Source: Phallusia mammillata (Eukaryota). From it: a stretch of DNA of 64,000 nucleotides. This document shows, one piece after another, positions 7,321 to 10,300 of this stretch; within the stretch, counting starts at the first letter, position 1; each line of letters opens with the position of its first letter. Location of the stretch: contig OZ281500.1 of the NCBI GenBank assembly GCA_965637545.1, positions 20,708,001-20,772,000 on the forward strand, in the 5' to 3' direction. The notes beneath the pieces were generated by a model. It was not told the origin of the DNA. It was given only the letters and a program-made list of their open reading frames with translations, and made no database searches. The position numbers were made by a program, and so were the translations under genes.

Positions 7321-10300
7321 ATGCACAATAACAAAAACCAGCGGCTGGGCTGGATGGTAAGTTTGTGCTACTAATCAGTCAAATAGTTTAAGTTTTCCAT
7401 TTCCAACTAAACCCTATGCAACCAACTAAAAAAAATATGTTTTTGCAGCCACCAATGTCATCGAACATCGTGTACCAACAGCACCATGTGTCCCGCGACA
7501 AGCGTGGACAAGTTATGGGAACCAGAGGAGGATTTCGGGGATGTACCATCTGGTTTACAGGTGTGACTGTTTTTTCAACTCATAAAAAACCAAAAAAGGC
7601 ACAAAAATAATTTAAAATTTTTATCATGATAAAAAAAACTCTTCCACCTCATTTACAATGTTTATCTTTTATTTTAACAGGTCTTTCTGGTGCTGGAAAG
7701 ACAACTGTCTCCATGAAGTTAGAAGAGTACTTGTGTTCAAAGGGTATTCCTGCCTACAGTTTGGATGGGGACAATATTAGACATGGATTAAACAAGGTTG
7801 TTATACTTAATTACATCCAAATGTCTACAGTAACACCTGATAGATATTTTTCGTGCTCTGTTAGGAGTAAATTTTGATTTTTGTATGATAGGATCTTGGG
7901 TTTTCGCCAAAACATAGAGAAGAGAATATCAGAAGAATTGGAGAAGTTGCAAAACTGTTTGCAGATGCTGGAGTGGTGTGCCTGGTGTCTTTTATTTCCC
8001 CATACAGGAAGGTGTGTTTTAAGAGCATTTAATTTATGTGCCAAATTATGTCTATATACAGTAGTTAACTCTTGCTAACAAAGAAAACTTACATAAAAAA
8101 TAATTATTAAACCAGGACAAAATTTTAAGCAATTGAAATCTAATTTTGCATGACAATTTTCTCGTTAAATTGTATAATTTAGTTGGTATGTATAACAAGC
8201 TGTAAACAACTGTGATTGGCTCTTAAAAATAATATAATCAACCAGCAACTTTAAAATTCAATTTTTGTACCAATGACTGTGTAATTTTCACTCGACCAAA
8301 TCAGGACCGTTTAAGTGCGCGACGTGTCCACGGGAAATCCAATCTACCATTCGTGGAAGTGTTTGTTGATACACCGCTGGGCGTATGCGAGAGAAGAGAC
8401 GTAAAAGGACTGTACAAAAAGGCCAGGAACGGACAGATCAAGGGTATGGCATCCAAAACCTTCAAATCAACAACAATTTTTAGAGTTCACTGCATGGTTT
8501 TGCTGTGTTTTGCATGACATTGCTTGCACTTTATGCCTAAACCAATCATATTCAATCGCGTTTCTGCCTCAAATCAACCAATCACGCAGCCTGAAATGCC
8601 GTAGTAGCTACTGGCAACACTGCTAACTGAATAACGTGGCTTTGCACAGGACAGGGACAGTGCCCGTACCGCACACCAAAACGGCAAGTTGCCATTCCTA
8701 GAGGTCTACGTTGACACACCCATCAGTGAGTGTGAGCGACGTGATGTCAAAGGCCTGTACAAAAAAGCCCGTCAGGGTATCATAAAAGGTAGTCAAATGA
8801 TTTCTTCCACGCGTAGAATTGTTTTATAGTAGCAAGTAACGCTGACCACAACCTTTAAAAACCTCGTTTTTCGTTGAGTTTTATCACTTTGACACAAGGG
8901 ATGGCTTTCGGCTGCACTGTGTTTTGTGTTTTTTTGGTACATTTTCATTTGGATTTGCATGTAACTTTCTTTTGTATTTGCTTTAACATATCGTACTGTA
9001 TTTGTGCACTGTGCATGTGAAATGTCCACATACTTTGTTTCTTGCTCAAAAACGCCTGATTGGATTAGCTTAACATTGCACTGTGTAATTTTTGTATGCG
9101 TTATACCAATTGCCTTAGTTGAAGCACATTTATATTGTTACAAAAGTTATCAGTGTTTTGAGTGGCCTCGTTAAACAACCTCTTGTCCCTCTGATAGGTT
9201 TCACTGGCATTGATTCCCCGTACGAACCTCCAGAGAGCCCTGAAGTCGTTGTAAAAACGGCGGAACAGTCAGTTTCCGAATGCATGATGAAAGTAGCTGG
9301 GTCACTAATGGAAAGGGTAAGCATATGTCCAAACTGTTAAATTTTACAGTCACAAAGTTGCTTAAAAAAAGTTTGAACTGTGTTTCTTGCCACTGTGACA
9401 CAAAAAGCGTTTTGAATTAAGGTCCTTGACCCAGCTGTGTTAAGTTAGGAGAAAGTACATTATACCACTGAACTTTGACCTCCAGTGACTGCGCAAATTC
9501 GTGATTTCTGATAATCACCACCAGGCCTTTAACGGAAAGTCTCATACCCATGCAATATTGACTCGTCGTTTTTCGGAAGTAAACTGCCGCTAAATCATTC
9601 ATTACCGTTGTAACTTACACTAAACCTAACCTGTGGTCAGATAGCAATTGTAACGTCACGTATAAAACGGATGATACAGCAAAAATTTCGTGTACGCATC
9701 TGTATGCTGGCCTCTGTTCAGATTGTCGAGTAACCACAACTTTTCTTGTTTGCTAAAGCTTGGTTACACTATAACTCTACAAGCACTTAGTGTGCTGATA
9801 TCATGCTTAGTTAACGATGACTGCAGTATATTTATCACGTTGTATTAATGGATGTCAAATTTGTGGGTAAAACGTCCAAGTCAAGTCACTGTTGAAACGA
9901 ATGATGTAGCAAAAATTGTATTTGATGGCGAACTTTCACACACCAAGGCCTGTACAGTTTGGCGAGCAAGCCACAACGCCTTTTGTTTGCCATGGGTATG
10001 TTTCCTGTAAGCACTTTGGATTGCTGATGCAATAGTGTACCAAATGATGACTTTGTACAACACACCGCCTGCTTACATAGGGCAAATGACCACAAGACTA
10101 AACATTCGTAATTTTGCAGGGGATCATTCCGTACGAATCATCCAATCTTGTACAAGAACTCTTTATTGCTCCAGATCAGCTAGCAGCTACCAGAGCTCAG
10201 GCCGAATCACTACCCGCTTTCGAAATCACCAAGGTATGGCTTGTTTGAAGTTTGTTATGGATGTTTTATCGTTGATGAGTGCTTATGTCAAGCAATTAAC

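What the first reader, a model, noticed from the sequence alone, without database searches (positions are those of the whole stretch)
8305..8788. Tandem mutually exclusive exons in the APS-kinase domain of PAPS synthase
Seen: two homologous exons of exactly 139 nt with the same phases and intact splice sites; both keep [18 protein letters not shown] but differ at about a third of residues while third codon positions have diverged heavily, indicating an old duplication under selection. Including both or neither shifts the frame, so exactly one must be used. Established: this segment includes the APS-kinase ATP lid region. Inference: one gene yields two kinetically different APS kinases, the role vertebrates might fill with paralogs. 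I do not recall this being described for PAPSS.
Basis: partly seen in the sequence, partly recalled or inferred. Interest (0 to 1): 0.85.

Follow-up and report, generated by a model that had tools for sequence, protein, structure and literature searches.

The report
Alternative lid exons in ascidian PAPS synthase
The single PAPS synthase gene of the sea squirt Phallusia mammillata carries two tandem, interchangeable 139-base exons for part of its APS-kinase domain; the pair has been kept across all three ascidian orders, and only the first exon was spliced in the RNA data examined for this species.

Summary
Exons 8305-8443 (A) and 8650-8788 (B) are both 139 nt, have the same phase and are flanked by AG/GT. 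They are 62% identical in DNA and 70% in protein. Using both or neither shifts the frame.

The gene is ASAK/PAPSS of the ascidian Phallusia mammillata. My spliced A model is 100% identical to CAB3264649.1.

The A-then-B pair also lies in the Ciona, Clavelina and Styela genomes and in three unidentified ascidian contigs. B exons form one clade, and independent duplications are rejected (AU p 0.002 and 0.017). Both exon types are under purifying selection (pN about 0.12 and 0.17, against saturated pS about 0.8).

mRNAs or gene models carrying B alone exist in four other ascidians:
- RefSeq isoforms of Ciona (X2, X4) and Clavelina (X2)
- a Molgula tectiformis database protein
- an RNA contig from a Styela relative

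In Phallusia itself, RNA contigs from four studies splice only exon A. B appears only in unspliced contigs at about 1% of the depth.

B lacks G at donor position +5 in 7 of 7 species, whereas A has it in 6 of 7. GCAUG motifs cluster in the flanking introns, which suggests A is the default exon and B a regulated one.

No paper in the searched library describes this. The scan had noted the GCAUG motifs on this same stretch (s1-382341), not on other DNA. I class it as a new member of a known kind.

The parts
7449..14919 (+). Coding part of the PAPS synthase (ASAK) gene. It has 14 coding exons plus the alternative exon B and encodes 602 aa from the ATG in the first listed exon.
   Evidence: The exon model was built from RNA joints and splice sites. 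The translation is 100% identical to P0292 = CAB3264649.1, Phallusia mammillata ASAK. Pfam APS_kinase, PUA_2 and ATP-sulfurylase match the exon pieces.
7892..8011 (+). Constitutive exon upstream of the pair, ending ..FISPYRK in phase 0
   Evidence: RNA joints 7796>7892 and 8011>8305 in four runs; Pfam APS_kinase positions 48-87.
8305..8443 (+). Exon A, 139 nt: the form spliced in all RNA contigs examined. Its donor is AGG|gtatgg, with G at +5.
   Evidence: It is identical to the corresponding part of the deposited Phallusia protein P0292.
8444..8649 (+). Intron between A and B, 206 nt, with two UGCAUG motifs (8491, 8511). Its last ~15 nt before B are conserved in the related contig L003.
   Evidence: Overall identity to L003 is 0.55, equal to the shuffled level, yet the CACTGCATG block and the ..CGTGGnTTTGCACAG end are retained.
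8650..8788 (+). Exon B, 139 nt: the alternative copy. It is open in frame, with acceptor ..gcacag and a weak donor AAG|gtagtc (no G at +5).
   Evidence: Orthologues are present in six other ascidian loci. In this species it was seen only in unspliced low-depth RNA contigs.
9198..9316 (+). Constitutive exon downstream of the pair, starting in phase 1 and reading (G)[12 protein letters not shown]..
   Evidence: RNA joints 8443>9198 and 9316>10120; translation.
8147..8152 (+). UGCAUG 158 nt upstream of exon A, inside the 12-nt TTTTGCATGACA that recurs at 8508-8519
8956..9017 (+). Two UGCAUG motifs (8956-8961 and 9012-9017), 168 and 224 nt downstream of exon B
   Evidence: L003 has GCATG 129 and 219 nt downstream of its B exon.

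Best explanation
This is a pair of mutually exclusive exons made by an ancient tandem exon duplication in the single PAPS synthase (ASAK) gene of ascidians. Each exon encodes 46 residues of the APS-kinase domain: one helix, one beta strand and the first two thirds of the mobile lid.

The ligand-contacting residues are identical in both forms (the R and K of ..[11 protein letters not shown]..). The forms differ consistently at five positions:
- two on one face of the preceding helix (position 3 and position 7)
- two in the first lid helix (L/I at 25, V/E at 27)
- one just before the GFTG loop (position 44)

Because 139 is not a multiple of three, mRNAs with both or neither exon carry an early stop. 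Only A-only and B-only mRNAs can therefore make enzyme. That the faulty mRNAs are removed by nonsense-mediated decay is inferred.

Exon A has the stronger donor and is the default form. It is the only form spliced in the Phallusia RNA examined. Exon B has a conserved weak donor and is probably included only where an activator acts. GCAUG motifs conserved around the pair make an Rbfox-type factor the leading candidate.

Shown: the anatomy, the conservation, the selection, A usage here, and B-only mRNAs in other ascidians. Inferred: B usage in Phallusia, Rbfox control, and any enzymatic difference.
For: - Anatomy and frame.
- Identity of the gene and organism: (100% identity to CAB3264649.1).
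- Tandem A-then-B exons, each 139 nt with AG/GT, in L003, L004, L005, Styela clava (L007), Ciona intestinalis (L008) and Clavelina lepadiformis (L009).
- B exons form one clade (support 90/88). Holding the A and B exons of one species together is rejected (AU p 0.0017 for Styela, 0.017 for Ciona).
- Selection over 21 species pairs: A has pN 0.12 and pS 0.84; B has pN 0.17 and pS 0.81. Between Phallusia and L003, exon B is 78% identical while the flanking introns are at the shuffled level, 0.52-0.55.
- B-only transcripts or models: Ciona X2/X4 differ from X1/X3 only within this segment; Clavelina X2 and the Molgula tectiformis database protein A0A9R1_MOLTE; RNA contig L006, where the upstream exon, B and the downstream exon are contiguous.
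- Exon A is spliced in four of four Phallusia RNA runs from four studies.
- G at donor +5: 6 of 7 for A, 0 of 7 for B.
- GCAUG density in the three introns around the pair against the rest of the gene: 5.5 vs 0.6 per kb here and 4.2 vs 0.75 per kb in Ciona. At least one motif sits in the A-B intron in all seven species.
- Lid limits and contact residues: PMC8710738. Secondary structure from the model.
Against: - No spliced B junction was seen in Phallusia. B is covered only by unspliced contigs at depth 4-10, against 50-900 for the mRNA.
- No Phallusia B-type protein or fragment is in the protein collection.
- Contigs drop rare variants, and the tissues and stages of the four runs are unknown to me, so this is absence of evidence only.
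- RefSeq isoforms are pipeline models whose read support I could not inspect.
- The exon tree rests on 46 columns, and the clades tested were named after the tree had been seen.
- The GCAUG enrichment is modest in Styela and Clavelina (1.3 vs 0.7-0.8 per kb).
- No functional difference between the A and B proteins has been measured anywhere.
- One ascidian lineage (L001, L002, P0189) has a single exon, so the pair can be dispensed with.
Confidence: 0.75

Rival explanations
1. Exon B is functional in other ascidians but is no longer used in Phallusia mammillata. It would be a silent relic that has not yet decayed.
For: Only exon A is spliced in four RNA data sets. Both deposited Phallusia proteins are A type. 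No B-type Phallusia protein was found. One ascidian lineage has lost the pair (L002).
Against: The frame, both splice sites and every invariant residue of the family are intact. Against the closest relative, L003, synonymous sites are near saturation (pS 0.70) while pN is 0.09, and the flanking introns are at random identity. The acceptor region and the GCAUG motifs around B are also retained. A relic would have to be very recent.
Confidence: 0.13
2. Exon B acts mainly as a poison exon. Its inclusion together with A shifts the frame and sends the mRNA to decay, tuning PAPSS output rather than producing a second enzyme.
For: A+B gives a stop at codon 183. The intron holding B is the only intron with RNA coverage in the contigs. 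The contig break at 8649 in run X17 could mark a junction onto B.
Against: B is conserved at the protein level with saturated synonymous sites. That pattern is not expected of an exon that is never translated. B-only, full-length open mRNAs exist in other ascidians.
Confidence: 0.07
3. The second copy is an assembly artefact or a chance open frame.
For: None found.
Against: The copies are only 62% identical in DNA, whereas assembly duplicates are near identical. Low-depth RNA contigs of three runs match the B region without differences. Two probable DNA runs hold 81-83% of the gene's sampled words. The same arrangement occurs in six other ascidian loci from independent assemblies. Pfam scores B at E 2.7e-14.
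Confidence: 0.01

Closest known systems
RefSeq isoforms of Ciona intestinalis ATP sulfurylase/APS kinase (X1/X3 versus X2/X4, e.g. XP_009857500.1 versus XP_026695321.1) and of Clavelina lepadiformis (X2 versus X3-X5)
   Same: It is the orthologous gene and the orthologous exon pair. Ciona X3 and X4 have equal length (601 aa) and differ at 12 residues, all inside this 46-residue segment. The genomic exons lie in the same A-then-B order.
   Different: These are automatic annotation records. I found no paper that mentions the alternative exons. In Phallusia only the A form is deposited or seen in RNA.
Tandem-duplicated mutually exclusive exons in general, for example pyruvate kinase M exons 9/10 (named from my own knowledge) and the human tandem duplicated exon substitutions surveyed in PMC9741552
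   Same: Adjacent homologous exons of equal length and phase, ancient, both under selection. They replace a homologous segment of an otherwise identical protein. PKM is likewise a metabolic enzyme whose two forms differ in regulation.
   Different: The gene and the lineage are different. PAPSS is not mentioned in the main text of the human survey. Exclusivity here can rest on the reading frame alone. No competing RNA structures were found, and the A-B intron (79 to about 1930 nt across species) is too long in most species for steric exclusion.
Vertebrate paralogues PAPSS1 and PAPSS2, and the human PAPSS2a/2b splice forms (the latter from my own knowledge)
   Same: Two versions of the same bifunctional enzyme in one organism. 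The APS-kinase domain is described as marginally stable and stabilised by nucleotide binding (PMC8710738).
   Different: The vertebrate versions are separate genes that differ along their whole length. Both score closer to the A type in this segment, so they do not descend from the A/B pair. The PAPSS2b insert is a short extra exon in the sulfurylase part, not an exchange of lid exons.
Rbfox-controlled alternative exons (GCAUG-dependent; position rule from my own knowledge)
   Same: (U)GCAUG clusters in the introns beside the regulated exons and is kept in otherwise unalignable intron sequence.
   Different: No binding or dependence has been tested. The enrichment is strong in Phallusia and Ciona and weak in Styela and Clavelina.

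Membership tests
Bifunctional PAPS synthase (ATP sulfurylase / APS kinase) | APS-kinase domain followed by the PUA-like and ATP-sulfurylase domains in one polypeptide | tested here: met
   Pfam APS_kinase, PUA_2 and ATP-sulfurylase match the exon pieces. The 602-aa spliced model is 100% identical to the Phallusia mammillata ASAK protein P0292.
Bifunctional PAPS synthase (ATP sulfurylase / APS kinase) | Conserved nucleotide-contact residues of the kinase lid in the alternative segment (PAPSS2 R158 and K161) | tested here: met
   ..[11 protein letters not shown].. is invariant in all A and B exons of seven species. The roles of the residues come from PMC8710738.
Mutually exclusive exon pair from tandem exon duplication | Adjacent homologous exons of the same length and phase, each with its own splice sites | tested here: met
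   139 nt each, AG/GT, 62% nt and 70% aa identity. The same holds in six other loci.
Mutually exclusive exon pair from tandem exon duplication | Mature mRNAs carry one exon or the other | tested here: inconclusive
   In this species only A-containing mRNA was seen. B-only mRNAs or models exist in Ciona, Clavelina, Molgula tectiformis and a Styela relative. Forms with both or neither exon were not looked for at read level.
Mutually exclusive exon pair from tandem exon duplication | Both copies kept by purifying selection | tested here: met
   pN/pS of means is 0.14 for A and 0.20 for B over 21 species pairs, with saturated pS. Introns are at random identity.
Mutually exclusive exon pair from tandem exon duplication | A mechanism that prevents double inclusion or skipping from giving protein | tested here: met
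   Both alternatives shift the frame and create early stops. Removal of such mRNAs by nonsense-mediated decay is inferred, not tested.
Rbfox-regulated exon | Conserved (U)GCAUG in the flanking introns | tested here: met
   Five UGCAUG in 908 intronic nt around the pair, against 0.6 GCAUG per kb in the rest of the gene. At least one lies in the A-B intron in seven of seven species. Two are retained against L003 in an otherwise random intron.
Rbfox-regulated exon | Exon choice depends on an Rbfox protein | not testable with these tools
   This needs knock-down or minigene experiments.

The most novel reading that the evidence does not exclude
Ascidians, which have one PAPS synthase gene, have for the whole of their radiation used a splice switch to make two APS kinases with different lid and helix surfaces. 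There would be a default A form (the embryonic and notochord cDNA form) and a B form switched on in particular tissues by an Rbfox-type factor. The two forms would differ in lid dynamics, and so in APS inhibition, stability or partner binding. This would be a splice-based counterpart of the vertebrate PAPSS1/PAPSS2 division of labour.
Probability: 0.35. Interest if true: 0.65.

Novelty: new member of a known kind. Interest (0 to 1): 0.5.

Why it matters
PAPS synthase supplies the sulfate donor for all sulfation reactions, and its APS-kinase domain is reported to be marginally stable (PMC8710738).

This exon pair is a natural experiment. The catalytic contact residues are held fixed, while five positions on the lid and an adjacent helix are exchanged, and the arrangement has been maintained across all three ascidian orders.

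It gives sulfation biochemists two ready-made lid variants to compare. It gives tunicate biologists a conserved, simple two-exon switch in a known Brachyury-target notochord gene (PMC3034685), with candidate Rbfox elements.

It also shows that database isoform records can hold conserved alternative exons that no paper has described.

Tried and rejected
- Short-fragment search with the exon B peptide. It found no identical fragment, only read-through ORFs of the homologous exon in other animals. These did lead to loci L001 and L002.
- Representative search with the exon A peptide. It was slow, but it gave P0031, a read-through ORF spanning A, the intron and B in a relative.
- P0161 and P0149 from that search looked like mis-predicted mammalian, human-like PAPSS1 proteins. 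I did not use them for any further search or comparison.
- A full-length query could not be given by reference because the gene is spliced. I used an alignment of an insect fragment with the window's exon peptides instead. The first such alignment, A1, was too poorly aligned and was replaced by A2.
- Look-ups of P0295 and P0201 failed because only the longest product of a gene is on record. I repeated them with P0192 and P0195.
- No inverted repeats were found that could form competing RNA structures in 8012-9197.
- Accession numbers of the source runs were not found in any paper, so L001-L006 remain unidentified to species.
- Vertebrate PAPSS1/PAPSS2 as descendants of the A/B split: rejected, since both match A better.
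- I did not type the spliced B isoform into any tool, so an exact look-up of a Phallusia B protein was not done.

Full report
**What is in the sequence**

The + strand between 7449 and 14919 carries a compact PAPS synthase gene.
- Exon A is 8305-8443 and exon B is 8650-8788. Each is 139 nt, preceded by AG, followed by GT and open in the same frame.
- They are 86/139 identical in DNA and 32/46 in protein.
- 31 of 46 third codon positions differ, and 19 of the 32 shared residues use different codons.
- The Nei-Gojobori proportions are pS 0.88 (saturated) and pN 0.24.

Either exon joins 7892-8011 to 9198-9316 in frame. With both exons a stop appears at codon 183 of the model; with neither, at codon 134.

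Both peptides match Pfam APS_kinase positions 88-132 (56.0 and 53.9 bits). Both align to residues 138-183 of human PAPSS1 chain 1x6v_B.

**Gene and organism**

I built the exon model from RNA joints and splice sites. It has 14 coding exons, one of them with a GC donor.

The A isoform model (602 aa) is identical at every residue to P0292, which is CAB3264649.1, 'ASAK ATP sulfurylase/APS kinase [Phallusia mammillata]'. The window is therefore from the ascidian Phallusia mammillata.

ASAK is known in Ciona as a Brachyury-downstream notochord gene. That paper says nothing about its splicing (PMC3034685).

**RNA evidence in this species**

Twenty public runs hold parts of the gene. I laid contigs of four runs from four studies on 7380-10300.

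In every run one high-depth contig (depth 53-906) is spliced through five GT..AG introns and uses exon A, through joints 8011>8305 and 8443>9198.

Exon B is covered only by short, unspliced contigs at depth 4-10:
- X1: 8496-8909
- X17: 8497-8677 and 8649-8837
- X8: 8527-8685

No other intron in the stretch has any coverage. The break in X17 falls at B's acceptor and might reflect a branch in the assembly graph.

So A is the main form here, and use of B in Phallusia is not shown. Contigs drop rare variants, and I do not know the tissues or stages of these runs.

**Comparative evidence**

The representative search with the A peptide returned P0031, a 168-aa ORF that reads through an A-like exon, an intron and a B-like exon in another species.

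Fetching loci showed the same A-then-B arrangement, each exon 139 nt with AG/GT, in:
- three unidentified ascidian contigs (L003, L004, L005)
- Styela clava (L007)
- Ciona intestinalis (L008)
- Clavelina lepadiformis (L009)

These cover the three ascidian orders.

In an exon tree the nine B-type sequences form one group (support 90/88). Forcing the A and B exons of one species together is rejected (AU p 0.0017 for Styela and 0.017 for Ciona). The caveats are that the tree has only 46 columns and the groups were named after the tree had been seen.

One lineage (L001, L002, P0189) has a single exon in the interval.

**Selection**

Over 21 species pairs:

| Exon type | mean pN | mean pS |
|---|---|---|
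| A | 0.12 | 0.84 |
| B | 0.17 | 0.81 |

Between Phallusia and its closest relative L003, exon A is 82% and exon B 78% identical. The intron between them and the flanks are 0.52-0.55 identical, which is the level of shuffled sequence. Exon B is thus kept by selection on its protein sequence.

**Transcripts with B elsewhere**

- Ciona RefSeq isoforms X3 and X4 are both 601 aa and differ at 12 residues, all within this segment. X1 and X2 repeat this with a longer N-terminus. The reference Ciona protein NP_001027723 is A type.
- Clavelina isoform X2 is B type and matches the genomic B exon. X3-X5 are A type.
- The Molgula tectiformis protein A0A9R1_MOLTE is B type.
- Logan contig L006 (3008 nt, from a close relative of Styela clava) carries the upstream exon, B and the downstream exon contiguously within a full 613-aa frame.

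**How the choice may be made**

Frame incompatibility is enough to make only single-exon mRNAs productive. No inverted repeats suggest competing RNA structures.

The donor of A has G at +5 in 6 of 7 species. The donor of B has it in 0 of 7. This fits A as the default exon and B as an exon that needs help.

Following note s1-382341, I counted UGCAUG. The only + strand copies in the gene's introns are the five at 8147, 8491, 8511, 8956 and 9012. The GCAUG density around the pair is 5.5 per kb, against 0.6 per kb elsewhere in the gene. In Ciona the figures are 4.2 against 0.75. The enrichment is weaker in Styela and Clavelina.

Every species has at least one GCAUG in the A-B intron. Two are retained between Phallusia and L003 in otherwise random intron sequence. 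An Rbfox-type activator is therefore the leading candidate, but this is inference only.

**What changes in the protein**

In an AlphaFold model of residues 1-215 (mean pLDDT 78.8) the exon (residues 115-160) covers:
- a helix (to residue 125)
- a strand (130-135)
- two short helices (139-145 and 150-155)

By PMC8710738 the flexible lid is P151-S180 in PAPSS2 numbering. R158 stacks on the ATP adenine and K161 contacts APS. The exon corresponds to PAPSS2 128-173, so it holds the first 23 of the 30 lid residues.

Those contact residues and the whole ..[11 protein letters not shown].. stretch are invariant in A and B. Five positions separate all A exons from all B exons:

| Position in exon | A exons | B exons |
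|---|---|---|
| 3 | L/Q/E/V | D/N |
| 7 | R/H | A/D/I/L/T |
| 25 | L | I |
| 27 | V | E/L |
| 44 | Q/E/L | I/V |

Positions 3 and 7 lie one helical turn apart on one face of the helix. The switch therefore alters a helix surface and the lid hinge, not the catalytic contacts. Whether this changes kinetics, stability or binding partners is untested.

**Comparison with what is known**

The kind is well known: tandem-duplicated mutually exclusive exons (PMC9741552). PAPSS is not mentioned in the main text of that human survey.

Searches combining PAPSS or PAPS synthase with mutually exclusive exons, and ASAK with Ciona, gave no description of this pair.

The isoforms are, however, already in RefSeq for Ciona and Clavelina. 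Human PAPSS1 and PAPSS2 both resemble the A type, so the vertebrate paralogues are not the descendants of A and B.

**Verdict**

This is a real, conserved exon pair. It is very probably a working mutually exclusive pair in ascidians, with A as the default form. B usage in Phallusia itself is still to be shown.

It is a new, unpublished member of a known kind and is already visible in automatic annotation. Interest is moderate.

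Noticed in passing
window 12602-13267: The intron after exon 12513-12601 has a GC donor (AG|GCAAGT) with a normal AG acceptor. The frame is needed to give ..LDKYR|LTPLEL.. and matches the deposited protein exactly.
   Followed up: partly
window 7448 and upstream: RNA contigs join two different upstream sequences to 7448. The one in run X8 encodes ..RQPDVGDHESPP, the N-terminus of deposited protein P0177. The one in X1 and X5 differs. 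Ciona RefSeq shows the same two N-termini (618 and 601 aa). This suggests alternative first exons or promoters.
   Followed up: partly
window 13441-13607: Deposited Phallusia protein P0177 (503 aa) reads through the donor at 13440 into the intron (..[12 protein letters not shown]..), so it derives from an intron-retaining transcript model. It differs from the window by one residue there (G for D).
   Followed up: partly
window 8496-9209: Low-depth unspliced RNA contigs cover only the intron that holds exon B. The other four introns in 7380-10300 have no coverage. In run X17 two contigs overlap by 29 nt and break exactly at B's acceptor (8649).
   Followed up: partly
window 8144-8155 and 8508-8519: The 12-nt TTTTGCATGACA occurs exactly twice, about 160 nt upstream of exon A and about 140 nt upstream of exon B. 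It may be a remnant of the duplicated unit or a kept regulatory site.
   Followed up: no
window 8276-8288 and 9080-9092: An exact 13-nt repeat, ACTGTGTAATTTT, lies 17-29 nt before the acceptor of exon A and again 106-118 nt before the acceptor of the downstream exon. It is unexplained.
   Followed up: no
L007 11066-11144 (Styela clava): The intron between the A and B exons is only 79 nt in Styela, against 206 nt here and about 1900 nt in L004 and L005. It still contains a UGCAUG.
   Followed up: partly
L002 98-4490 and L001 811-1326: An unidentified ascidian lineage has a single exon at this place. It has an A-like core (..VFVDTPLQVCE..) and B-like ends (DRDSAR.., ..GIIK). No second copy lies between the flanking exons in L002.
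   Followed up: partly
window 15413-17118 (- strand): Open frames resembling a TauD-type dioxygenase lie just downstream of the gene on the opposite strand, as another first-stage note says. I did not examine them.
   Followed up: no
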